A program made the translations under genes and the position numbers. DNA of 64,000 nucleotides from Octopus sinensis (taxonomy: Eukaryota), in the NCBI RefSeq assembly GCF_006345805.1, contig NC_042999.1, positions 29,760,001 through 29,824,000 on the forward strand, read 5' to 3'. Of the stretch, positions 7,420-51,462 are shown piece by piece. The notes beneath the pieces were generated by a model. It saw nothing but the letters and a program-made list of their open reading frames with translations. It had not been told where the DNA came from and did not search any database. Position 1 is the stretch's first letter. Every line of letters begins with the position of its first letter.

Positions 7420-7546
7420 ATACTTACCCCACGAGCTCCTCCTTTTTATTACACCTTTACACCAAACACATTGCTATCCACCAAAATACTTACCCCACGT
7501 GTTCCTTTTTATTACACCTTTGCCAAACACATTGCTATCCACCAAA
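7420..7546 (+). repeat. ~65-bp tandem duplication immediately upstream of the Helitron ATG
   Basis: ATACTTACCCCACG...CCTTTTTATTACACCTTT..CCAAACACATTGCTATCCACCAAAAT occurs twice, and the second copy runs into ATGCCACCCAAG. Confidence 0.85.
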
Positions 7547-10500
7547 ATGCCACCCAAGAAGAGAAGGACCATCCTCAGCCCTCGGACGGCCAAGGCATCG
7601 GCTGCTAGGGCTAGAAGGGCACGCGAGACCCACGAGGAAACCGCCTTGCGCCTCTCGCAACCAGCTTCCCGTTATGCCGCTGCTCAGGCATCTGAAACTA
7701 CTAGCGACCGTTCTACCCGACTTGCAAGGGTCGCAGCGTACAGATCTTCCCTCCGCTTGAGGTTGACGAAAGAGCAACAGTCCAGCCAAAACATGCGGGC
7801 TTCTTACTGTGCTTCCATCCGCAGAGCTCGCGAGAACCCCGAACAAAGGGCCATTCGGAATGCGGCTAACGCCACTAGCACTGCCAGGACACGATCTGTC
7901 GAAACCTCACAGCAGAGGAGAACTCGCCAAGATGCTGACGCCACAAACAAAGCCATGGCCAAAGCTGCCAAAACACCTCAGCAGAGGAGAGCTCGCCAAG
8001 CTGCTAACGCCGCAAACACAGCCAGGGCTCGATCTGCCGAAACTCCACACCAACGGACTATTCGGACATCCAGACATGCCATTAACACTGCTTCTGCTAG
8101 GGCTTCAGAGGGTGCTGAGGCGAGAGCTGAAATGCTTTCAAGGGATGCCACTGCTACCGCTGTCGCACGTGCATCTGAATCTGCTGAGGCACGGTGCACT
8201 CGACTTGAGAGTATCAACAAACGTCGGGATATCATTCGTGGTGTACGTACCCCTGCCCCCGCTTTCTGGTTGTCACTAGCATTCAACTACGACGCCACAA
8301 TTAACTTTTCCTTGCGTGACGACATCAAGATAGGGTCAATGACAATTGTATGCCAGTTTTGCAAAGCCAAGAAATGGCCCGGAGAGCCACCTGGTTTGTG
8401 CTGCTCTGGTGGCAAAGTGGACCTGCCACCCCTACGGGAACCACCTCAACCACTGAAGGATCTCGCGGCGGGTTTAACCCCCGATTCGTCACAATTCCTT
8501 GAAATAATTCGAAAGTACAACTGCTCATTCCAAATGACCTCTTTCTGGGCCAAAATTCCTCCCAGAGAAGGCTGGATGCCTACTTTCAAAGTGCAGGGAC
8601 AGGTCTACCATCTTATTGGGTCACTTCTGCCAGACGAGATTCAGCAGTCTTCTTTCCTCCAAATATACTTCATTGCCGACTACAACCACCAGGTTGATGC
8701 ACGCCTTGGAATAATACCGGGTACAAGCTATGTTCCCCGCAAAGACATTCTTCTCCTCTCCAAACCATGCTTCATGATATCAACAGCTACGTCTGCAGCT
8801 TCAGATATGCCTTGGACAGTGCTCCTTCTCCAAACTTCACCGTTGTCATTGATGCTGATAAACGACCCCACGGGGAGCACGAACGCCGTTTCAACGCACC
8901 TGCGTGCAACGAAATTGCCGCAGTTATACACGGAGAGCAACACAACAGCCGTGACATAATCATCTCCTCCCGTGGTAACAACCTACACAGGATCAGCGAG
9001 ACTCACAGATCTTATGACGCGCTTCAGTATCCATTGCTTTTCCCTTATGGGGAAGATGGCTACCACTTCGGAATTCCTTTACGGCAGCCCTCCAATCAAA
9101 CTACTGCGGCATCAAAGACGGTTTCCTGCAGGCGTTCTACTCATCATACCGGTTCATGGTCAGGGAGGGTGAGTTCAATTTATTGCCCCGTTGTCGTCAG
9201 CTATTCAACCAGTTCGCCGTCGACATGGCCGCAAAAATGGAATCGGAAAGGCTGCTATACATTAAACTTAATCAGACCAAACTTCGCTCCGACTCCTACA
9301 TTCATCTCCGTGACGGTTTGCAACAAGAAAATGACCCTCGCAACATCGGCAAGCCATGCATTCTACCCTCCACCTTCACGGGAGGACCGCGATATATGCG
9401 TGAAAGGATCCAAGACGCCTTGACCTACGTGCGCATTTACGGCCGGCCGGACCTCTTTATCACCTACACGTGCAATCCCAGCTGCGACGAAATCACTCGC
9501 GAAATCCTCCCGGTCAATCTCACACCCATCGACACGACATCGTTGCTAGGGTTTTCCGTCTGAATTTGGGCAAAATGAAGGATTTGATAGTTAAGGGTCA
9601 GATTTTCGGGCATGTCAGGTGCCACATGTTTCGGTCGAGTGGCAAAAGAGGGGCTTGCCACATGCTCACATCTTAATTTTGGCTCACTCATAAAATTGAG
9701 ACTAATGACATTGACAATTCATTTCCGCCGAGATTCCTGACCCCGATGAGGACCCCGGACTCTACGAAATTGTCCGCACTACCATGGTACACGGGCCCTG
9801 TGGACCAAATTACGCCAACACACCATGCTACAAAACCGGATTAGCCTGCTCAAAGGGATTCCCTAAACGGTTCACTTTGGAGACTCAAACAGGCGGCGAT
9901 GGGTATCCGCTGTACAAACGAAGGAGTCCAGCCAATGGAGGCCGCACGATTACGGTTGGGCGACATCAAGTGGACAACAGCTACATTGTCCCCTACTGTC
10001 CTCTCCTGTCGAAGATATTCAAAGCCCACGTCAACGTTGAGTTCTGCAGCTCCATCAGGTCAATACAATATGTCTGCAAATATATCAACAAAGGCAGCGA
10101 TGCTGCCATGTTCAGCATCCAGAGGACCACCAGTCGCGACGAAGTGTCCAACTACTTGGCTGGCCGGTACCTCAGCAGCAACGAAGCGTTTTGGCGCATT
10201 TACGGCTTCCTGCTCCATCAGAGACACCCGGCTGTGGTGCAGCTTGCTGTACACTTGGAAAATGGACAGCGGATTTACTTCACAGAGCAAAGTGCTGTGC
10301 AGATAGCCACCAGCCCTAAAGACACAACGTTGACTGGTTTCTTCAAATTATGCCAACGTGATGACTTCGCTCGAACGCTTTTGTACCCACAGGTCCCATC
10401 GTACTTCGTGTGGTCTAAAAACACCTGGGTTCGACGGAAATCCGGCAAAAACGTCGAAAGCTTCCCAGGCGTCAAGTTTGACTCCTGCCTGGGTCGAGTT

Positions 10501-12416
10501 TACAACATCCCGCCAAACCAGCGAATGCTTCTACCTCCGTCTCCTTCTACATGAGGTCACTGGTCCAACAGGTTTCGCCAATATAAGTACCGTCAATGGG
10601 GTTCTGTGCGACACCTTCAGGGAAGCATGTATGAGACTTGGCCTTCTAGAGGATGACTCCCAGTGGGACGCCACGATGGCAGAGGGTGCTTTACTGCAAA
10701 CGCATTCGGCCCTGCGACATCTTCTTTTCGCAATCCTTCTTCAAAAATGTCAGCTTAGTCATCCACTAAGTCTCTGGATGAAATACAGGGATGACATGTC
10801 GCACGACTTCTTACGTACGGCTCAGCAACACTGCCCTTCCGCCGAGATCACGTTCACCAACTTCATTTACAATTTTGCGCTCATTCAACTCGAAGACGCT
10901 GTCATCGATATGGGTGGGTCTGCTTTAACAGAGTACGGCCTTCCACCACCCACACGTGAACACGCCAATGTTATGTCTGCTGAATTGTTACGCAAACTTC
11001 CTACTGCATTGAGGAACTGCACCAGTACGTCCAAGATAATGAACCACGGCTGCTTCCAGACCAGCGCATAGCCTACAACACCATCGTAGACTCTGTCAGA
11101 CAGCAACGTGGGGGGATTTTCTTCCTTGATGCACCCGGCGGCACAGGCAAAACCTTCGTCACTAAACTAATTCTGGCAGAGGTCAGACGCAACACGGACA
11201 TTGCCCTGGCTGTAGTTTCCTCTGGTATCGCGGCCACGTTGCTTCCGGGTGGCAGAACCGCCCACTCTGCCTTCAGACTCCCGCTCGATCTGGCAAAGTC
11301 CGAGTCACCTATCTGCAACATCGCCAAGAACTCAGAACAGGCCGACATTCTTCGCAGATGCAAACTCATCGTATGGGACGAGTGCACTATGGCACACAAA
11401 GGCGCCCTTGAGGCACTGGACAGGTCCCTGCAAGACATCAGAGACTCTACGGCCCCCATGGGAGGATTAACTTTACTTCTTTCAGGAGACTTCAGGCAGA
11501 CTCTACCTGTTATTCCAAAAGGAACCCGTGCCGATGCCGTGCGCGCGTGCCTTAAGTCGTCAGCTCTTTGGGCACATGTGCGGCCCTTGCACCTCCAAAC
11601 TAACATGCGCGCGCAGTTAATTGGTGACAGCGGATCCGCTGCATTCTCCAGGGACCTCTTATCGCTCGGTGAAAATAGGATGCTGTCTGATGCGGATGGC
11701 TACGTTCAATTGGACTCACTTTGCACCATTGTCGACACCCCTGCTAGCCTCCGGGACGCTGTCTTCCACGACCTACAAAACAATTTACGCGACCTAAAAT
11801 GGCTGGCAGGCAGAGCTATTCTCGCACCCAAAAATACAACCGTCAACTCCATCAATATCCAGCTACTTGAAGCTATTCCTGGTGATGTCCACGTCTACAA
11901 ATCTATAGATAGGACAGCAGACCCCGCCCAGCTTGCCGATTATCCTGTTGAATTCCTGATTCACTTGAACCGCCAGGCCTGCCACCACACATCCTGAAGT
12001 TAAAAGTCGGTGCGCCCATTATGCGCATCAGGAATTTGGTTCCACCTAAACAGTGCAACGGCACACGTTTGGTTGTGAAACATTTGGCACCACATTTAAT
12101 AACGGCCACAATACTTACCGGTTGTGGGAAGGGAGAGGACGTCTTCATTCCACGGATGCACCTTCAACCGTCGGGCGCAGACCTACCAATCCACTTCAGG
12201 CGTTCTCAGTTTCCTGTTAAACTCTGCTTCGCAATGTCCATCAATAAATCCCAAGGCCAAACGCTACAAGTCGCTGGGTTACATTTGGGCGAACAGTGCT
12301 TCGCCCACGGTCAACTCTACGTGGGCTGTTCACGCGTTGGGAGGCGCAATGATGTTTTCATGTTTTCGCCCAAACGGACAGCTAGGAACATCGTATATAC
12401 AGAAGTATTCCAGTGA
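7547..12416 (+). pseudogene. Helitron Rep-helicase (~1620 aa reconstructed: STPR-like repeats, Zn finger, HUH-Y2 Rep, PIF1-family SF1 helicase), broken by ~9 frameshifts as assembled
   Basis: CQFCKAKKWPGEPPGLCCSGGKV Zn finger; YPLLFPYGEDG; ILPSTFTGGPRYM; GRPDLFITYTCNP; VEWQKRGLPHAHILI (HUH, ~9634-9678); YVCKYINKG (Y2); FLDAPGGTGKTF (Walker A); IVWDECTM; SGDFRQTLPV; CNGTRL; [20 protein letters not shown]; [11 protein letters not shown]. Confidence 0.93.
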
Positions 12417-12538
12417 AGACAAGACATTGCAACGTCCACATGCACCTTCGTTCCCTGGAGGGAAAGGACTACATTGGGATTAGTCGTTGCCTACTAGGGG
12501 CTCTTACATACCCGGGCAACGCCGGGCTATGCTGCTAG

Positions 12539-14432: not shown

Positions 14433-16150
14433 TCAATCTGGTTGCCGGGTAGGTCTATAGTTCTTGTAGTTTGCATAATTCTTATGCATGCAATTTGGGG
14501 AGTGTTCTGAGATCTTGTTAAGGAGAGGGCCTTTGGCGAACAAGATCTCTAGGCTCTCCGAAATGCAAAGGTCGCAGCAGGTATGGCCTCCTGTGTACGA
14601 ACGCGCCTTCTGTAGTAGTTTCCACTTGGTCTTGAAGGGGATGGAGTTCCTTTTAAGGTACCAGATGTGGGCGGCGAGGGTAGTTTGGTTGGATTTTTTC
14701 CGGTCGCTGGAACAAGTGTCTGTGTGCGTACCAACGGGTCTTAAAGATGTTTGACGTCATTCCGATGTAGGATTTTCTTTTATCGTCAGGGCCTGATCTT
14801 ACCTCGCATGTATATACTAGGTCCCTCTGTAGGCAGTTGTTGTTGAGGGGGCAGGTGGTTTTATCAGGGCAGTTGCAATTGGTATCGGACGTTGGATGGG
14901 CCTCGGAAAAAGTAGATATGTTAAGTTTTTTCACATTGTTGTTGGCTAGGTTCCTGGCTAGATTGGGCGTGGTAGAGTAGGAGAGTCTAATAGTGTTCTT
15001 ATTTAGGATAGTGTAGTACTTATGTTGGGTGGGGAAGTGTTTCTGTAGGAGAGTGAAGAAGATTTTAGCTACAGGTGTAGCGACCTCACGGTTGAAGGGG
15101 GGGGTTGTACCAGCTAATGTATCTTCGTCTATTTTTCATGGGTTGGCGTGGGGCTATACAAGTATAGGTAATCTTATCATTAAAGCCACTGCGGGCCAGG
15201 GCCTCGTTGTAATAGTGGGCTGCGGCCTTAAAGATATCTTCCGTGGCGGACAGGCTAGAAATTCTAATTGAGACACTTTTTACTAGGTTATCTAATATAT
15301 TTTTGGGGTGGTTGGAATTAATATCTATATATCTAAGGGATTCATTTGGTTTGTGGTACGGGTAATAAAGTGAGGTTTTTAAGTCGAGGGTGACGTCAAG
15401 GAAGTTAGCTTTGGTTAAGTTGGATTCTAAGGTAATCCTAAGGCCTAAGTTTTTAAACAAGGTGTAAAGATTTTTCCGGAACCCATCCGTGGTCCTGGGG
15501 TTTATGTTGTGGAGGGCGAAAAGGCCGTCATCGCGGTAAAGACCACCGGAGAGGCCTGTGAATAGGGTTTTCAGCCTATGGAGGATGAAAAGGCCCACTA
15601 GGTCACTTATTTCAGCCGAGTCGCTAGCACCATGGGATCCGTCATGGAAAAGAAAAGTCTTACGTGCGTGGAGGATCACATCTTGCTCGGCCTCTGTGAT
15701 CGTGGAGGACCTCCTGGCGAAGTTAATCGCGTCGATCAGCAAGCTCTCCGATATGGAGGCGTAGTAATCCTCGATATCCAGTTGTAGGAATCGGGTGTTG
15801 CTTTTGTCAGGTAAATCCCGGAACCAGGTTATTGCCTCGGAGGTCCTATTCCAGAGTGGAAGGGGTGAAGCTTCAGGCATTTTTGGTAAAATCCTGTCCA
15901 GGATCTTCTTGCTGACGGATCCGATGTCAGACTAGGTTGGGTTAATCAGTCGGACCGACGGTTTATTTTCGAAATGGTCTTTGTGGACTTTCAGGGTGAA
16001 GTGTGGGGACTTCACCTTCAGGGGTTCACTTCGGTCATCGATTTTAAGGGAGGTGGCAATCTCTTTCCCGGCTAAGTTGGTTTCAGTTAGCGCTGTGTCG
16101 TCTACTTTCTTGTACTTAGCTGTGATGGCGTTATCAGCTAGTCTGTTGTA
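14433..16150 (-). pseudogene. PLE ORF: reverse transcriptase + C-terminal GIY-YIG endonuclease (Naiad-like, inferred), 5'-truncated and disrupted
   Basis: [15 protein letters not shown]; VRLINPT*SDIG; LQLDIEDYYASI (motif A); GASDSAEISDLVG; GGLYRDDGL (motif C); FLDVTLDL; YYPYHKP; SNHP; WYNPPF; CNCPDKTTCPLNNNCL; LVYTCEV...SYIGMTSNIFKTRWYAH; HIWYLK...CDLCISE...LLNK...CMH. Defects: a TAG at 15932-15934, +1 frameshifts in the C8 (~15100) and A6 (~14695) runs, and an internal deletion at ~15630. Confidence 0.92.
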
Positions 16151-16476
16151 GACATGAATCTGTAGGTACGCGTACGTATGTGTATATACGTGTATGTATG
16201 TAGATGTATGTATGTATGAATATAACGCGTGCGTGAGTGTATGTGTATGAGTGTACGAATGAGTGAGTGTGCGTGCTAATGAGTGTGCGTGCGTGAGTGA
16301 GTGCTTGTGCTCAAGTAGAAAGATAAAAGGGACTAGCTGTCGTAGCCAAGATGCTTGTGACCAGCGGTCAAATATAACAAAAGTAATAAATGAAGATAAT
16401 AAAATTAAAATTAGGGAATGGGTTTGTATTTGTATGTATATGTGTGTATGTGTAGGTATGAATAGGAACACATATG

Positions 16477-17162: not shown

Positions 17163-18306
17163 ATACATGACATATATACAATGCTCACTTGTATCTAATA
17201 TCATTGGCGCATCGTACCCCAACATTTACGCAAATGCTCGAAATACTACGTTTTTATAATAAAGCGCAATAGAAAATGACGCCGGTTCTTCAGATCCAAT
17301 CTACTTTTCACGCACTTTTCACACGTATTCGTATATATGTTTAAGTATGTATATATGTATGTATATGAGTACGTGAGTGTGCCTGTGTTCATATGTATGT
17401 ATAAATGCGTATTTATATCTCTACAATGAATACATTCTAAGTTGCTATCCGGTTTGCATCCAACTTAGCATACACACACACACACTCATTCACACATACA
17501 CACGTTCACACATGCACGCACACGCACGCGTACGCGCAAAACACACGTCATGTTTCTTCTTCTTATGAGCATGCATGTATTGAAGTGTCTACGTTAATAT
17601 TTCATATGATTATGACTGCAATTGCTCTTTTTTGTAATTGATCTTGTTTACATTACATTATTTCTTTTAAACGTGTAGATTCCCCATATTCAGGGAGAGA
17701 GAGATGATGGAGAGAGAGGAGGGAGAGAGAGCAAATGAAATAGGGAGAAAGTGCGAGTGCGTGTGTGATAGATAGCATCTGCTGCATGTTTTCAGACACT
17801 GGGTATCTTGCATAAACACGGAAAATCTCCGAATCATTTTGCAAATGTTTAGCCTCCTTCATAATTCTTTATTATGCCACCGTATTTATTCTTTTCAGTT
17901 CAAAGACAGCTACTGTTATCCTACGCACTTTTACTTTCTTCTATGGAATCTGACATGCCTGAATCCTTAGACATATTCACTCACCCTGTGGCACAGAACT
18001 TTATTGAATTTTCAAATTTTATTAACTGGTTTCAACCTACGCTGATTTATTTCTATCTTTCTCCAAGTAAAATACATTTACTGGTTCACATTTGTTCCTT
18101 CTTTTTTCTCGAAGAAATATCACTTGCCTACTGATCATATAAGCCTAATATTTTCTTTCAAATATTTGACGATTCGAAATATTACTTACTGGAGTACATT
18201 AAATGTAATTAGTAACCGAAGAAGAAACAAGTTCTTTGAGTTTCTATATCCCAGTTAACATATAAAATCATATATTTTTCTGAATATATCTCTTATATAT
18301 AAGGAA

Positions 18307-18703
18307 CTAGCAGTATCGCCCGGCGTTGCTCGGGTTTGTAACGGAAATAATTATATAAGCATTTTTAGAGAGTTATAGCCAAAAGATAGCAAAAAATGCA
18401 TTAAAATGGAAAAAAATGATGGTAATTTTTTTTAAAAAATCGTTGACTCATCTTAGACATGTTTAAAGAGTTACTTCCCTTATATAATAGCGAAAAAATG
18501 CATTAAAATGGAAAAAAAAATGATGGTAATTTTTTTTTAAATCGTAGACTCATCGTAGACGCGCGCTAATACCCACAAGGGCTCGATATGAATCACGACT
18601 ATAAGATACCCGGTTTTGGTTAAACTGCTCCGCAAAATGTGGGGGTAGTTAGGAATCTAAATCGTAGGAGACAGACACACAACTTCACTTTTATATATAA
18701 AGA
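18307..18703 (-). mobile_element. Non-autonomous Helitron (397 bp)
   Basis: Minus strand 5' A|TCTTTATATATAAAAGTG and 3' CCCGAGCAACGCCGGGCGATACTGCTAG|T. Has an internal ~60-bp duplication (18393-18450 / 18494-18555). Confidence 0.9.
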
Positions 18704-19092
18704 TTTGTACCACTATTACTATGTACATTAAAGAATTTCTTTACTTCTCTAAATATATCAAACGATGGTTCGCGTATATTTGCATTTACAACATTGTCTC
18801 ATGCGTACAGACACATTAACATATTTACAGGAACACAAAAACTATACATACAAACGTATATATTGAAGACATCTATCTAAATAGGATTTCAATCCCGTGT
18901 TTACATGAGCAAGATGAGACATGGATACGGAAGCGCGATGCAAAAAACATTATTACGAACACATGATTTAATTAGGTTACTTGAGAGATTTACATAAGGG
19001 CGATATGGGTGATAGTCTTTCGTGATAGCTCTAGAAAGCAGATTGATTGTATCTCCATCGATGAGAAATTTAAAGTTTCAGTAAAATATGCA

Positions 19093-27502: not shown

Positions 27503-28044
27503 GTATGTATGTATGTATATAAATACATGTACTTGGTATCTGAAGACTTAAATATCAGTATCTTACTCTCTTCGAAGAAATTAAAATTTCTCCAAGACGA
27601 GATAGAATTGTAACATAAGAAAACCAAATAGACATGCAGAGTTTGTTCTCCTATGAGCGGAATACAACGATTTAGAAATTGTCAATTCATCAAATGTTGG
27701 AAGCTCTCCTGTAACGAATGTTAGGATGGATTTGTATAACCCTGATGGACGTGTTGACAATGATTAAAAAAAAAGAAAAGGAATAATAATCATTGTAAAC
27801 GTTTTCTATATATCCGAGAGCTAGTCTGGAAACATTGGACACACCAATTCATGCAGCATATTCAAAACATTATCGATGATGACTTCGGAAATCAATGATC
27901 GCAATCGCCAAAGAACTTCAGCTGTCAGAGTGAACTATCAGAAATGTGATTATTCGAAATAACAGATACTGGTGCTGTAGCAGATATGTGTCTGTGTGCT
28001 TGATTACTATAGATAGAGGGACAAAGAGAGAGAAAAAAAAGGGG

Positions 28045-28335
28045 CAACTTCGTCTAAATTAGCCCAAATGATCTCCAACCATTATTCAACTTTCCGAGAT
28101 AAGAGAAAACAACACAGCACGGGATTAAGCAAACTAATTTTGCGTCTGAAAGACAGCAATTCAACCTTCAAGCTGGAATGGTCCATTTTGTCGGTATCCG
28201 TTCCGTTTGATAAGGGCAGAAAATTTTGTGGCGTCTGTAATTCTGAATTTTTTCATATAGTATTCGCCAAGGTACCTTTAATAAATTCAATCGTCGAGAG
28301 GTCCTACAGGTGCTAGCACTGAAGGAAATACACCT
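28045..28335 (+). pseudogene. PLE GIY-YIG C-terminal fragment (same type as 14433-14760)
   Basis: SNHYSTFRDKRKQHSTGLSKLILRLKDSNSTFKLEWSILSVSVPFDKGRKFCGVCNSE...LINSIVE...C*H parallels HIWYLK..FKTKWKLL...CDLCISE..LLNK...CMH. Confidence 0.75.
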
Positions 28336-28930
28336 TTTACTCATACGAATTATAACTAATATAGATTAGCCCCTTTAATTTTAATTAATATATTTCCATT
28401 TATATATTTCACCCCTTTAGTTTAAAAAAAAAATTATGCTTTCAAAGACATACTACCCAATCCATTGAGGTTTGTTTTGCCTTTGTCCCAATACCTCGCC
28501 CTCCTCTTCCTTTTTTTCTCTCTCTGTCCCTCTATCTATAGTAATCAAGCACACAGACGCATATCTGCTACAACACCACTATCTGTTTTTTTTTGACATC
28601 TACCCATCCACATACACTTTCACGCACACACATACACACACATAGGTATTAATACAGTTATATTCATTCACTCACACAGACGCTCATTCAGAAAAGATTT
28701 AACAAAACCCACCATGCATACGACCTGTTCCAAATCACCTTACTTTTCTTAGGCCTCTCTCCCCCTACTTCGTTTGAACTCTTGAACCTTTAGAACCTTC
28801 TAGAATTTTCTACATTCAACCAGTTTGACGTTACTCCTTATAAAGAAATATTAAAGAGACACTCATTATCGCTATGCGCTCTGTGAGAGCAGTCATTTAA
28901 AGTTATTGTGAATCTTGATGTTGACATAAA

Positions 28931-31553: not shown

Positions 31554-31873
31554 TCACAAACACACACACACACACACACACATATATATGCATATTCAAA
31601 ATCAACTTATTTGTTGGCATTAATTATTTATAGTTTGGCTGTTATTTCTGTCAAGTAAAGACTTATTTATTTTGTTTATTATTTTAACTTTTTGACTGGG
31701 GTGGAGTGGTGATGCTCACTAAATGTTTAATAATCTCTTGAGAGTTTTGGACAAAAGAGTAATGTTTCCTGAACTGCAGACTGGACAGAATCCCCTATAA
31801 AGGGTCCAACAAAGGCACTAACCATGCCATGCGGTTATCTTAGATGGATTTCGTAACTTTTTACCAATATGTG

Positions 31874-32278
31874 GGCGTAGGAGTGGCTATGTGGTAAGTA
31901 GCCTGTTTACCAACCACATGGTTCCGGGTTCAGTCCCACTGCGTATTACCTTGGACAAGTGTCTTCTACTATAGCCTCGGGCCGACCAAAGCCTTGTGAG
32001 TGTATTTGTTACACGGAAACTGAAAGAAGCTCGTCGTATATATGTATATATATGTATGTGCGTGTATGTTTTGGTGTCTGTGTTTGCCCCCCTAGCATTG
32101 CTTGACAACCGATGCTGGTGTGTTTATGTCCCCGTCACCTAGCGGTTCGGGAAAAGAGACCGATATAATAAGTACTGGGCTTACAAAGAATAAGTCCCGG
32201 GACCGAGTTGCTCGATTAAAGGCGGTGCACCAGCATGGCCGCAGTCAAAATGACTGAAACAAGTAAAAAGAGAAAAAG
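31874..32278 (+). mobile_element. tRNA-derived SINE of the dominant family in this window
   Basis: GGCGTAGGAGTGGCTATGTGGTAAG...GGTTCAGTCCC...GGGCCGACCAAAGCCTTGTGAG...GGTGCACCAGCATGGCCGCAGTC..ATGACTGAAACAAGTAAAAG. Related copies lie at 33095-33216(-), 40885-41300(-) and 61703-61860(+). Confidence 0.8.
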
Positions 32279-32729
32279 AGAAAGAAATGTCAATCCAGTC
32301 TAGAGTTGGTAGTTTCTCGACAAAATTTAGAGAAACAAAAGCAAGGATTTCCTAAATGATATCTGAACTGAAAGTACCGACAGCTGGGAAAAGTACGTGA
32401 AGGAATTCTGATAGACATACTATTAACTCGGTTAGTAACCCATTTTCTCCAATTTTTTTATTTCCATTGTTGTGTGAGTTAATTCTGCAAATTTGAAGAA
32501 TGCCGGGTCCATGTGAGCGTGTAGTATATAGTGAATCCAAATAAAGAAGACAAAAAAGAAAATGCAACAACGAGATGCTGTAGTACAAATACTGTATAAT
32601 CGGGCTCTCAGGAAAGGAAAGAAAGGGAAATTTACGGTTTGAGCAAAGCTCTTCTTCAGAAATGGAGGAAACTCCAAAAGTTATATATATATATAATCTA
32701 AATAAGCAACAAGAATAACTTCGGTAATT

Positions 32730-49534: not shown

Positions 49535-49800
49535 GGGTGGTGCAATAGCTTAGCGGTTAGGGCCATGGACTCGCGGTCGCGTGTTTATTGAGCGAAAACA
49601 CCTTAAAGCTCTATGAGGCTCCGGCAGGGGGTGGTGATCCCTACTGTACTCTTTCACCTCTCTTTCTCTCACTCTTTCTTCTGTCGGCCTGCTCGCTTAG
49701 CCAACGGGGTGGCGTCATTCGAAGGCTAAAACAATGCGAACGCATTGTGACAAGGGATGTGTAGCAACATCTGATGGAATGGTCGGTCACGTGATCAAGT
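49535..49800 (+). mobile_element. tRNA-derived SINE-like repeat
   Basis: GGTGCAATAGCTTAGCGGTTAGGGC head (A-box-like), B-box region apparently deleted, then TTGAGCGAAAACACC body. Confidence 0.5.
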
Positions 49801-49851
49801 GATATATATAGAGAGATATACACACACACATTTATATATATATGTATATAT

Positions 49852-49896
<45 letters not shown>

Positions 49897-49897
<1 letters not shown>

Positions 49898-50680
49898 TAA
49901 TCAATATAGGGTGGCAAGGAAAATTTTGTAGAATTTTATTGCCACCAGCGGCCCAGCGGGAAAAAAATTAAATAGTCATAGACCATTTTTAAGTTCAACA
50001 TTAACATTAAGGAACGGCCATAATAGGCCATTCACCCACTAGAAATAACAGCCAAAGCTTCTACCGCAAATAAAGATTAATTCCGTAAACAGGAGAAAAT
50101 TAAAAAAAACATTACCCTGTAATTTCTTGTACGGTATACCGTTTCATCCGCTGTTTAATGGTATACTAACCTGATTAAATTAAATCAAGCCAATCTTCCA
50201 TAAGCCCTCGGATTCTTCAGCAAGAAATAGCTCAAGACGGAACAGATATATACACGAGGCATACCCAATCTTGCAAGTCAATATCTGACCTAAAATTTTC
50301 AAATCGTCGCACTCGCGCCAAATTTATCGGCAGCAAATAAATATCAGCCGTCGATTCCATTACGGAATTAACCAAAAAATTCATAATTAATCAATATAGG
50401 GTGGCAAGGAAAATTTTGTAGAATTTTATTGCCACCAGCGGCCCAGCGGGAAAAAAATTAAATAGTCATAGACCATTTTTAAGTTCAACATTAACAATTA
50501 AGGAACGGCCATAATAGGCCATTCACCCACTAGAAATAACAGCCAAAGCTTCTACCGCAAATAAAGATTAATTCCGTAAACAGGAGAAAATTAAAAAAAA
50601 CATTTACCCTGTAATTTCTTGTACGGTATACCGTTTCATCCGCTGTTTAATGGTATACTAACCTGATTAAATTAAATCAA

Positions 50681-50684
<4 letters not shown>
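49897..50684 (-). mobile_element. ORF-less HHR-bearing partial-tandem element (~490-bp unit, ~297-bp duplication), retrozyme-like
   Basis: 49897-50192 is repeated at 50387-50684 with ~2 indels. A complete HHR spans the end of the first copy, and the element is flanked by (AT)n on both sides. Confidence 0.85.
50122..50228 (-). ncRNA. Type I hammerhead ribozyme, all stems perfect
   Basis: ATTTCTTG-CTGAAGA-ATCCG...CGGAT-GAAA-CGGTATACC-GTA^CAAGAAAT. Stem I is 8 bp, stem II is 5 bp, stem III is the palindrome ACGGTATACCGT, and cleavage falls between 50130 and 50129. Confidence 0.92.
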
Positions 50685-50725
<41 letters not shown>

Positions 50726-51462
50726 CGTGTATATACATGAATATATATATAAATATATTTACATGGAGTCTGTGTGTAGGAGCGAGTGTGTGTGTACATA
50801 CACACATACAGAGAGAGTGAGCGTTATAGATATAAAATGATCAAAGTCGATGGCATAAATAGAAACTAGTACCAAGTCTATAACCTACTACTTAATGTTT
50901 CGCAGCGTGTATCGGTTCCAAATAGCAATTTAGCTGCAAACAAACAAAAACGGGTTGTTACCAATGATTGGGTAGATGTTTCGTGACGATTTAATATCTC
51001 CGGTAGACTCAAGGAGTATGACTTCCATTTCTGTTTGCCTTGACGTGACACCTTCGAGATGTGTCTTAAATGCTACACATCTGTGAATCTATCTGTCTAT
51101 CTACTTACCTATCACATATTTTAATGCACCTATACACAAACGCAGGCAGTCAGAGAGAGACCATCATACACACATCCACGCACATACACACGCATACACA
51201 AATATATATATAAATATATATATAAATATACATATATATATACACACGTAAAAAACATATGTGTATGCCAACAGGAAACACAAGATATTTTAATAAGATT
51301 CTAGGTTAAAATACAATTTTTAAAAACCTTTTTAAACAGTGCAGCTATTTATGCGCATCACACCATTGTCAACGTTTATATACTTTCGAATCGATCAAAA
51401 TATTTACATACACACACATACATACATAGATACATATATACATATTAGTATACACACACATT

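What the first reader, a model, noticed from the sequence alone, without database searches (positions are those of the whole stretch)
49897..50684. ~490-nt retrozyme-like unit with a textbook HHR and two cleavage sites one unit apart
Seen: ~1.6 tandem copies and no ORF. One complete HHR has perfect stems. The upstream partial copy keeps GAAA-stem III-GUA-stem I' (site 50622/50621) but lacks its CUGAAGA. The two GUA sites are 492 nt apart, and the copies are nearly identical (young). Inference: the stem III palindrome ACGGTATACCGT could allow dimeric or trans cleavage releasing a unit-length RNA that circularises. This is the best candidate in the window for an active small circular-RNA retroelement.
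Basis: partly seen in the sequence, partly recalled or inferred. Interest (0 to 1): 0.8.

Follow-up and report, generated by a model that had tools for sequence, protein, structure and literature searches.

The report
Hammerhead-ribozyme retroelement insertion in octopus-like DNA
A young, non-coding 788-bp insertion (1.6 copies of a 492-nt unit with one complete hammerhead ribozyme) sits in a TA microsatellite of an octopus-like genome; it is a fairly ordinary member of the animal "retrozyme" / non-autonomous Penelope-like class, and no activity has been tested.

Summary
On the minus strand, 50684->49896 is an A-B-A insertion: A1 is 299 nt, B is 193 nt and A2 is 297 nt. The two A copies show no substitutions and two 1-nt indels, and the period is 492 nt. 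No ORF exceeds 52 aa. One complete type-I hammerhead (50228->50122) has an intact core and folds as a three-way junction. My descriptor finds it once in the window and in 0 of 300 shuffles. Rfam Hammerhead_1 aligns full length but below threshold (21.4 vs 34 bits), because helix II carries a long insertion. "Textbook" is therefore overstated; the 10.1-11.1 pair is also A-U. The upstream copy keeps only the substrate half. The two GUA|C sites are 492 nt apart.

The partial tandem, the (TA)n target, the hammerhead and the lack of coding capacity match a metazoan non-LTR retrozyme, that is, a non-autonomous Penelope-like element. The 492-nt circle is predicted to be unusually stable (z = -6.2) in one polarity only. 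The single catalytic half can dock on the upstream site at about MFE energy, so release of a unit-length RNA is plausible.

Cleavage, circles, copy number and a PLE partner could not be tested. I found no second copy anywhere. Verdict: new member of a known kind, modest interest.

The parts
49896..50684 (-). Whole insertion: 1.6 head-to-tail copies (A1-B-A2) of a 492-nt non-coding unit.
   Evidence: No ORF longer than 52 aa.
50386..50684 (-). A1: the upstream, 5'-truncated copy (299 nt). It begins inside the helix II extension of the HHR.
   Evidence: Alignment: 0 substitutions and 2 one-base indels against A2.
50193..50385 (-). B: the part of the unit present once (193 nt). It carries the helix I 5' strand, CUGAAGA and the helix II 5' strand.
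49896..50192 (-). A2: the downstream copy of A (297 nt), ending ...CCCUAUAUUGAUUAAU at the 3' junction with (TA)n.
50122..50228 (-). Complete type-I hammerhead. Helix I: 50228-50221 with 50129-50122. CUGAAGA: 50220-50214. Helix II: 50213-50209 with 50150-50146, plus a 58-nt extension. GAA: 50145-50143. Helix III palindrome ACGGUAUACCGU: 50142-50131. A17: 50130.
   Evidence: MFE fold is the three-way junction. Descriptor scan gives 1 hit against 0 in 300 shuffles. Rfam RF00163 aligns full length at 21.4 bits, E = 0.0034.
50129..50130 (-). Predicted cleavage site 2 (GUA|C) of the complete HHR.
50614..50642 (-). Upstream half-hammerhead (substrate half only): CGGAU-GAA-ACGGUAUACCGU-A|CAAGAAAU. 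Predicted site 1 lies between 50622 and 50621.
   Evidence: Docking of the downstream catalytic half on this site gives -171.8 kcal/mol against an MFE of -173.3.
50130..50621 (-). The 492-nt site-to-site monomer that double cleavage would release.
   Evidence: Folded as a circle: MFE -139.2 kcal/mol, z = -6.2 against 100 dinucleotide shuffles, 59% of bases paired, 22 of 145 pairs G-U. The opposite polarity gives only -94.8.
49910..49946 (-). 8-bp hairpin GGUGGCAA...UUGCCACC, 13 nt from the 3' end of the insertion, with AAUAAA in its loop. Possible RT recognition or initiation element (inference only).
   Evidence: Read directly.
49833..49895 (.). (TA)n microsatellite abutting the 3' end of the insertion.
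50685..50758 (.). (TA)n microsatellite abutting the 5' end of the insertion.
   Evidence: Perfect (TA)>=6 tracts cover 4.1% of the window.

Best explanation
This is one recent insertion of a non-coding, hammerhead-bearing retroelement of the metazoan 'non-LTR retrozyme' / non-autonomous Penelope-like (PLE) kind. The host genome is octopus-like.

Shown:
- A 492-nt unit is present as a partial tandem: a 5'-truncated copy followed by a complete one. This is the pseudo-LTR architecture typical of PLE-type integration.
- It sits inside a (TA)n tract.
- It carries one complete type-I HHR and one substrate-only half-site.

Inferred mechanism:
1. A PLE reverse transcriptase / GIY-YIG endonuclease supplied in trans nicked the AT-rich microsatellite. 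It copied a more-than-unit-length template (a multimeric or circular RNA) by target-primed reverse transcription and stopped inside the stable helix II hairpin.
2. If the locus is transcribed on the minus strand, the complete HHR cleaves its own site (50130|50129).
3. Helix III is a 12-nt palindrome and the two substrate strands are identical. The same catalytic half can therefore refold onto the upstream site (50622|50621).
4. This releases a 492-nt RNA with 5'-OH and 2',3'-cyclic phosphate ends. A tRNA ligase (RtcB) could circularise it into a compact, highly paired circle.
For: Anatomy.

HHR: core, helices and fold. Rfam Hammerhead_1 aligns full length. It meets the CUGANGA / GAAAY / RUH descriptor used for retrozyme HHRs (supplement of PMC7229834).

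Class features: non-coding, 36% GC. The RNA is strongly structured in one polarity only (z = -6.2; -139 vs -95 kcal/mol), as described for retrozyme circRNAs (PMC7229834).

PLE-type integration: PLE and non-autonomous PLE insertions are typically 5'-truncated partial tandems, with an insertion bias for (TA)n (PMC8557442). A PLE RNP nicks AT-rich DNA (PMC11167929). Both flanks here are (TA)n, while such tracts cover only 4.1% of the window.

Host context: the window carries PLE relics. Octopus vulgaris is reported to have 31 recently active PLE families (PMC13282606).

Two-site cleavage: the docked conformation on the upstream site is within 1.5 kcal/mol of the MFE, both before and after cleavage at site 2. 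The mussel retrozyme HHR also has a palindromic helix III. Dimeric HHR action and RtcB circularisation are documented for animal retrozymes.
Against: - Only one locus is available. There is no other copy in the window, in about 85 kb of sampled O. sinensis / O. bimaculoides DNA, in exact-pattern scans of the metagenome, prokaryote-genome and viral collections, or among called proteins. 'Family', copy number and mobilisation are therefore unproven.
- There is no sequence similarity to the PLE relic in the window.
- The HHR is below Rfam's gathering score. It has A10.1-U11.1 and no recognisable loop-loop contact, so it may cleave slowly.
- PLE HHRs can be dispensable for integration in vitro (PMC11167929).
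- Target-site duplication cannot be read in a microsatellite. Microsatellites also flank several other elements in this window, so the target preference rests on n = 1.
- There are no transcription data.
Confidence: 0.7

Rival explanations
1. Internally deleted autonomous PLE. The structure would be pLTR - remnant - pLTR of a once-coding Penelope-like element, rather than a dedicated non-autonomous retrozyme family. The HHR would be ordinary PLE baggage.
For: The A-B-A arrangement is the pLTR architecture (PMC8557442). HHRs normally lie in PLE pLTRs (PMC4209133). PLE relics exist in the window.
Against: B is only 193 nt and has no similarity to PLE proteins (tblastn with 120 PLE-like proteins hits only 14.4-16.2 kb and 28.0-28.3 kb). 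The HHR runs continuously across the B/A2 junction, and the whole 492-nt unit folds as one compact structure, which argues against a random deletion product. PLE HHRs are usually minimal, with a 1-2 bp helix III; here helix III is 4 bp plus a loop.
Confidence: 0.12
2. Local DNA-level tandem duplication, or the eroded remnant of a hammerhead-bearing satellite array (as in newt satellite 2, Schistosoma Sm-alpha or the cave-cricket pDo500), not a retrotransposition product.
For: The copies are head to tail with a perfect junction. Type-I HHRs were first found in satellite-like repeats. Multimeric arrays can collapse in assemblies.
Against: There are only 1.6 copies and no further diverged units on either side. 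Both boundaries are sharp and fall inside a (TA)n tract, and the 5' end falls inside a stable hairpin, as expected for reverse-transcriptase fall-off. Zero substitutions argue against an old eroded array.
Confidence: 0.12
3. Integrated cDNA of an exogenous viroid-like or circular-RNA replicon, not a genomic retroelement family.
For: A more-than-unit-length copy of a small structured RNA with an HHR is what reverse transcription of a circle would give (idea in PMC4209133).
Against: No ribozyme is found in the opposite polarity (Rfam on both strands), and the complementary strand is poorly structured (-94.8 vs -139.2 kcal/mol). The composition matches the host window (36% vs 35.5% GC). The type-I HHR with a palindromic helix III is the animal genomic type.
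Confidence: 0.03
4. A chance hammerhead-like motif in junk DNA, with no ribozyme function.
For: Below the Rfam gathering score. A-U at 10.1-11.1. AT-rich context.
Against: 0 hits in 300 shuffles of the window even with relaxed criteria. All 11 invariant core bases are present, together with helices of 8, 5 and 4 bp. The MFE is the HHR fold. The motif sits exactly where a unit-length RNA would be delimited.
Confidence: 0.03

Closest known systems
Metazoan non-LTR retrozymes (Cervera & de la Pena 2020, NAR, PMC7229834; Li, Clavereau & Pollet 2026, bioRxiv 10.64898/2026.07.22.740005)
   Same: - Type-I HHR with a palindromic helix III.
- Non-coding, AT-rich, head-to-tail repeats of a few hundred bp, with no PBS or PPT.
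- A predicted compact, highly paired unit-length circle.
- Co-occurrence with PLEs in the host genome.
- The 492-bp unit length lies inside the 51-972 bp range of consensus lengths reported in 2026.
   Different: - Only 1.6 copies at this locus, so only one complete ribozyme.
- The unit is longer than the 170-400 nt circRNAs described in 2020.
- Helix II carries a 58-nt extension, so the HHR falls below Rfam's threshold.
- The 10.1-11.1 pair is A-U.
- Expression, circles and copy number are not known here.
- My paper searches found no report of retrozymes in cephalopods. They found only a count of 235 Hammerhead_1 loci in the giant squid (PMC6962438).
Penelope-like elements and their non-autonomous derivatives (Craig et al. 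2021, PMC8557442; Cervera & de la Pena 2014, PMC4209133; Frangieh et al. 2024, PMC11167929)
   Same: - Partial-tandem (pseudo-LTR) insertion with a 5'-truncated upstream copy.
- Insertion into (TA)n / AT-rich DNA.
- An HHR in the repeated part.
- Non-autonomous PLEs are reported to make pLTRs and head-to-tail copies.
   Different: - No RT or GIY-YIG ORF.
- No detectable similarity to the PLE relic in the same window.
- Helix III is longer than in the minimal PLE HHRs.
- No inverted 5'-truncated copy and no recognisable 30-40-bp 'tail'.
Plant LTR retrozymes (Cervera et al. 2016, PMC4918200)
   Same: - Non-autonomous and non-coding.
- Two direct repeats, each carrying an HHR cleavage site, delimit an RNA that is excised and circularised.
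   Different: - Plant elements have type-III HHRs, true LTRs, a PBS, a PPT and 4-bp TSDs, and give 600-1000-nt circles mobilised by Ty3/Gypsy elements.
- Here the HHR is type I, there is no PBS or PPT next to the repeats (read), and the repeats do not end in TG...CA.
Hammerhead-bearing satellite DNAs (newt satellite 2, Schistosoma Sm-alpha, Dolichopoda pDo500). Recalled from general knowledge and from the reviews read.
   Same: A type-I HHR within repeats of 330-500 bp; dimeric (double-hammerhead) cleavage through a palindromic helix III.
   Different: Those occur as long arrays or SINE-like dispersed copies. Here there are 1.6 copies, and ARAGORN found no tRNA-like sequence that would suggest a SINE-type (Pol III) origin.

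Membership tests
Hammerhead ribozyme, type I (Rfam RF00163) | Conserved core C3 U4 G5 A6 N7 G8 A9 / G12 A13 A14 / A15.1-U16.1 / H17 | tested here: met
   CUGAAGA (50220-50214), GAA (50145-50143), the A15.1...U16.1 pair closing helix III, and A17 at 50130.
Hammerhead ribozyme, type I (Rfam RF00163) | Three helices around the core, with helix I open-ended | tested here: met
   The MFE of 50235->50105 is the three-way junction. Helix I is 8 bp, helix II is 5 bp plus an extension, and helix III is 4 bp plus a UAUA loop (z = -3.2).
Hammerhead ribozyme, type I (Rfam RF00163) | Score at or above the curated gathering threshold of the covariance model | tested here: not met
   No hit at gathering score or in a 1.2-kb E<=10 scan. 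A 136-nt scan aligns model positions 1-45 of 45 at 21.4 bits against 34, E = 0.0034. The penalty comes from the large insertion in loop 2. This is a database threshold, not a biochemical criterion.
Hammerhead ribozyme, type I (Rfam RF00163) | Loop 1 / loop 2 tertiary contact, needed for fast cleavage at physiological Mg2+ | tested here: inconclusive
   Helix I is a perfect 8-bp stem with no internal loop. Helix II opens into an internal loop after 5 bp. No conserved contact motif is recognisable, and without homologues there is no covariation to examine.
Hammerhead ribozyme, type I (Rfam RF00163) | Site-specific self-cleavage giving 5'-OH and 2',3'-cyclic phosphate ends | not testable with these tools
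   Needs in vitro transcription.
Metazoan non-LTR retrozyme | Type-I HHR inside short, non-coding, low-GC head-to-tail repeats without LTR, PBS or PPT | tested here: met
   492-bp period, 1.6 copies, 36% GC, no ORF longer than 52 aa. No PBS- or PPT-like sequence next to the repeats (read).
Metazoan non-LTR retrozyme | Two or more complete HHRs in tandem, so that a monomer is excised | tested here: not met
   There is one complete HHR plus one substrate-only half-site. Excision would need the one catalytic half to act on both sites. This is energetically feasible but not shown.
Metazoan non-LTR retrozyme | Unit-length RNA predicted to be compact and highly self-paired | tested here: met
   Circular MFE -139.2 kcal/mol, z = -6.2, 59% paired. 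The active HHR fold is only 2.0 kcal/mol above the MFE.
Metazoan non-LTR retrozyme | Multicopy family in the genome, expressed as linear and circular RNA | not testable with these tools
   No eukaryotic genome or transcriptome search is available. Indirect attempts found nothing.
Penelope-like element (autonomous) | ORF encoding a PLE reverse transcriptase, with or without a GIY-YIG endonuclease | tested here: not met
   No ORF. tblastn with 120 PLE-like proteins gives no hit within 20 kb.
Penelope-like element (integration signature; applies to non-autonomous derivatives too) | 5'-truncated partial tandem (pLTR) and an AT-rich / (TA)n target | tested here: met
   A1 is a 5'-truncated copy upstream of B-A2. 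Both flanks are (TA)n. With n = 1, target preference is only suggestive: (TA)>=6 tracts cover 4.1% of the window.
Penelope-like element (non-autonomous derivative) | Sequence similarity of its termini to an autonomous PLE of the same genome | tested here: inconclusive
   No similarity to the only PLE relics in the window. PLEs elsewhere in the source genome could not be searched.
Plant-type LTR retrozyme | Type-III HHR in true LTRs, plus PBS and PPT | tested here: not met
   The HHR is type I. No PBS or PPT.
Viroid-like / HDV-like RNA replicon | Ribozymes in both polarities, or RNA-only existence | tested here: not met
   It is DNA-encoded. No ribozyme is found on the complementary strand, and the complement is weakly structured.

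The most novel reading that the evidence does not exclude
A partial-tandem (1.6-mer) insertion with a single complete hammerhead may be enough to make a circular RNA. In this reading one catalytic half, with an unusually long structured helix II, cleaves its own site and then the identical upstream site through the 12-nt palindromic helix III, releasing a 492-nt circle. If so, the pseudo-LTR architecture that PLE-type integration creates would automatically make every new insertion circle-competent. That would link PLE integration and retrozyme circRNA biogenesis mechanistically. It would also be the first retrozyme family documented in cephalopods.
Probability: 0.25. Interest if true: 0.5.

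Novelty: new member of a known kind. Interest (0 to 1): 0.33.

Why it matters
If it is active, this is a compact natural example in which one ribozyme core serves two cleavage sites. It would also extend HHR retrozymes to cephalopods, whose genomes are reported to hold recently active PLEs. It gives a simple construct (788 nt) for testing whether the partial tandems made by PLE-type integration are what make such elements competent to produce circRNA. If it is not active, it is one more decaying HHR repeat, of the kind already catalogued by the thousand in invertebrate genomes.

Tried and rejected
- Rfam at gathering score on the whole window, and at E<=10 on 1.2 kb: no HHR. The mir-297 and mir-1277 hits there are microsatellite artefacts. 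Only the 136-nt scan recovered Hammerhead_1.
- TRF did not report the 492-bp period because there are fewer than 2 copies.
- Search for minimal PLE-type HHRs elsewhere in the window: none.
- Search for further copies of the unit in the window with blastn, word size 7: only chance matches of 30 nt or less.
- Exact 20-mer GAAACGGTATACCGTACAAG in the public collections: 3 metagenome contigs, 1 prokaryote-genome contig and 0 viral contigs. None has a CUGANGA context or other similarity, so all are chance matches.
- Six-frame pseudo-peptides of the unit used as a handle to find other copies among 5.8 billion called proteins: nothing.
- About 85 kb of O. sinensis / O. bimaculoides DNA and three Logan contigs, fetched via Helitron helicase homologues: no unit and no HHR. 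These loci did show shared interspersed repeats at 88-92% identity, which places the window in or near Octopus.
- The PLE RT ORF of the window as a route to same-species PLEs with pLTRs: best hits were only 45% identical and none came from cephalopods.
- tRNA / SINE origin: ARAGORN found nothing.
- LTR-retrozyme reading rejected: type-I HHR, no PBS or PPT.
- The bacterial promoter/terminator scan was not run, because the window is eukaryotic.
Full report
**What is there.** All coordinates are on the minus strand. The stretch 50684->49896 is a sharply bounded 789-bp block lying between two (TA)n microsatellites, at 50685-50758 and 49833-49895. BLAST, the repeat finder and a pairwise alignment show an A-B-A structure:
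- A1 = 50684..50386 (299 nt)
- B = 50385..50193 (193 nt)
- A2 = 50192..49896 (297 nt)

The two A copies have no substitutions. They differ by two 1-nt indels in short homopolymer runs. The period is 492 nt, so there are 1.6 head-to-tail copies. TRF missed the repeat because it has fewer than two copies. Neither strand has an ORF above 52-53 codons, also when the unit is read as a multimer. The window contains no other copy of the unit.

**The ribozyme.** At the B/A2 junction lies a complete type-I hammerhead:
- Helix I: AUUUCUUG/CAAGAAAU, 8 bp.
- Core: CUGAAGA.
- Helix II: AUCCG/CGGAU, with a 58-nt imperfect hairpin between its strands.
- GAA, then helix III ACGG-UAUA-CCGU, then A17 at 50130.

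The predicted cleavage site is between 50130 and 50129. The unconstrained MFE of 50235->50105 is exactly this three-way junction (-33.7 kcal/mol, z = -3.2).

A descriptor that requires the core plus all three stems finds this one site in 64 kb on both strands. It finds none in 300 shuffles, even with relaxed stem lengths. A looser descriptor for minimal PLE-type hammerheads finds nothing else in the window.

Rfam reports nothing at gathering score or in a 1.2-kb permissive scan. A 136-nt scan does align Hammerhead_1 (RF00163) over its full model (positions 1-45), at 21.4 bits against a gathering score of 34 and E = 0.0034. The loss comes from the large insertion in loop 2. The motif also satisfies the CUGANGA / GAAAY / RUH rule that the de la Pena laboratory uses for retrozyme hammerheads.

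"Textbook" therefore overstates it:
- The core and stems are perfect, but helix II is atypically long.
- The 10.1-11.1 pair is A-U. From general knowledge, G-C is usual there and contributes to a metal site, so the rate may be reduced.
- No loop 1 / loop 2 contact is recognisable.

**The upstream copy.** A1 starts inside the helix II extension. It keeps CGGAU-GAA-ACGGUAUACCGU-A|CAAGAAAU (50642-50614, with A17 at 50622). It lacks the helix I 5' strand, CUGAAGA and the helix II 5' strand. The two GUA|C sites are exactly 492 nt apart.

**Host and surroundings.** The window is eukaryotic, 35.5% GC and rich in microsatellites.
- A Helitron-type PIF1 helicase ORF has its best hits in Octopus bimaculoides, Acanthosepion pharaonis and O. 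sinensis, at about 60% identity.
- Interspersed repeats in the window match O. sinensis loci at 88-92% identity and O. bimaculoides at about 78%. The source is therefore an octopus or a close relative.
- The window holds a frameshifted PLE relic (RT plus Cys-rich linker plus GIY-YIG-like domain) at 16183->14439, and a scrap at 28020-28349.
- Neither relic is similar to the unit. No PLE-like coding DNA lies within 20 kb of the finding.

So at this locus the unit is not the pLTR of a coding PLE.

**What it most likely is.** The combination seen here is a type-I hammerhead with a palindromic helix III, in a non-coding AT-rich unit of a few hundred nt, arranged head to tail, with no PBS or PPT. 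This is the published definition of metazoan non-LTR retrozymes (PMC7229834). A 2026 preprint reports consensus lengths of 51-972 bp and argues that these elements derive from PLE pLTRs.

The integration signature also fits PLE machinery:
- PLEs and their non-autonomous derivatives insert as 5'-truncated partial tandems (pseudo-LTRs), with a bias for (TA)n (PMC8557442).
- A purified PLE protein nicks AT-rich DNA and starts reverse transcription inside its RNA (PMC11167929).

Here both flanks are (TA)n, while perfect (TA)>=6 tracts cover only 4.1% of the window. That is suggestive only, with n = 1, and microsatellites also flank other elements in this window. The 5' end of the insertion falls in the 5' arm of the 12-bp hairpin of the helix II extension, a plausible place for reverse transcriptase to stop (inference).

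Octopus vulgaris is reported to have 31 recently active PLE families (PMC13282606), so a trans-acting partner is plausible.

The absence of substitutions over 297 nt gives a 95% upper bound of about 1% divergence between the copies. On the scale used in that paper (JC 0.09 for about 25 My), this is of the order of 1-2 My, provided the copies have evolved independently (inference).

**How it could work.**
- *Structure of the monomer.* Folded as a circle, the 492-nt site-to-site monomer has an MFE of -139.2 kcal/mol (z = -6.2 against 100 dinucleotide shuffles). It is 59% paired, and 22 of its 145 pairs are G-U. The complementary polarity reaches only -94.8. This asymmetry indicates a structure selected at the RNA level in one polarity, as expected for a DNA-encoded retrozyme rather than a symmetric RNA replicon.
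- *Competing fold in the circle.* The MFE sequesters CUGAAGA and half of helix III in alternative pairings. The active hammerhead fold lies only 2.0 kcal/mol higher.
- *Two-site cleavage.* I modelled the transcript 50684->50100. The conformation in which the downstream catalytic half docks on the upstream site has a 12-bp intercopy helix III plus an 8-bp helix I, with helix II retained. It scores -171.8 kcal/mol, against an MFE of -173.3 and -163.2 for the cis hammerhead. After cleavage at site 2 it remains 1.5 kcal/mol above the MFE.

This is the double-hammerhead logic known for newt, ASBVd, PLE and axolotl ribozymes. The difference here is that only one of the two catalytic halves exists.

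The expected sequence is cis cleavage first, then refolding, then cleavage of the upstream site. This would give 63 + 492 + 233 nt, followed by RtcB-type ligation. None of these steps is shown. No transcription data exist, and PLE hammerheads can be weak or dispensable.

**Rivals.**
- *Internally deleted coding PLE.* Disfavoured because the hammerhead runs continuously across the B/A2 junction, the whole unit folds coherently, and nothing in B resembles PLE proteins.
- *DNA-level tandem duplication or eroded satellite.* Disfavoured by the sharp ends inside (TA)n and the lack of further diverged units.
- *cDNA of an exogenous circular RNA.* Disfavoured by the one-polarity structure, the host-like composition and the animal-type hammerhead.
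- *Chance motif.* Excluded statistically.

**Limits.** I could not find a second copy by any route:
- Exact-pattern scans of the metagenome, prokaryote-genome and viral collections gave only chance matches.
- Pseudo-peptides of the unit found nothing among called proteins.
- About 85 kb of sampled Octopus DNA contains no copy.
- The PLE ORF of the window has no close relatives that could lead to same-species PLE termini.

Family status, copy number, tandem arrays, covariation support and the identity of the autonomous partner all remain open.

My literature searches found no report of retrozymes in cephalopods. They found only 235 Hammerhead_1 loci counted in the giant squid genome.

**Verdict.** This is a real, well-formed feature and a new member of a known kind. 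It has two mildly unusual traits: the very long helix II, and a single catalytic core flanked by two identical substrate sites. Interest is modest.

Noticed in passing
window 14439-16183 (-): Frameshifted Penelope-like element relic. It has an RT core ORF (15880->15086; best database hits 45% identical, with PF26215 on the homologues), followed by a Cys-rich linker and a GIY-YIG-like ORF (14934->14653; Pfam GIY-YIG only at E = 0.07). TA/CA microsatellites flank it on both sides. No hammerhead lies next to it.
   Followed up: partly
window 28020-28349 (+): A second short PLE-like coding scrap, detected by tblastn with 26 of the 120 PLE-like proteins.
   Followed up: no
window ~7500-12420 (+): Helitron-like element broken into several ORFs. 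It has N-terminal STPR repeats (PF21107) and a PIF1 helicase (PF05970). Best hits are Octopus and cuttlefish proteins at about 60% identity.
   Followed up: partly
window 31872-32283 and 18294-18704: An interspersed repeat of about 410 bp, 88-90% identical to copies in O. sinensis loci L006/L007. This was the evidence used to place the window in or near Octopus.
   Followed up: partly
window 49813-49886 and 50681-50758: Rfam sub-threshold mir-297, mir-1277 and mir-3149 'hits' are artefacts of TA/CA microsatellites that fold as hairpins.
   Followed up: yes
window 49535-49800: A GC-richer island of about 265 bp between two microsatellites, directly 3' of the insertion. It is single copy in the window, ARAGORN finds no tRNA in it, and it has no match in the sampled Octopus loci. 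Possibly another small retroposon.
   Followed up: partly
window 50130-50621 (-), folded as a circle: The MFE of the circle hides the ribozyme. CUGAAGA pairs with UCUU..AGC just upstream. GGUAUACC of helix III pairs with GGUAUGCC about 120 nt upstream. The active fold is only 2.0 kcal/mol higher, so this could be an on/off switch.
   Followed up: partly
window 49910-49946 (-), and its twin at 50400-50436: An 8-bp hairpin GGUGGCAA/UUGCCACC with AAUAAA in its 21-nt loop, ending 13 nt before the 3' end of the insertion. It is a candidate RT-initiation or 3'-processing element.
   Followed up: no
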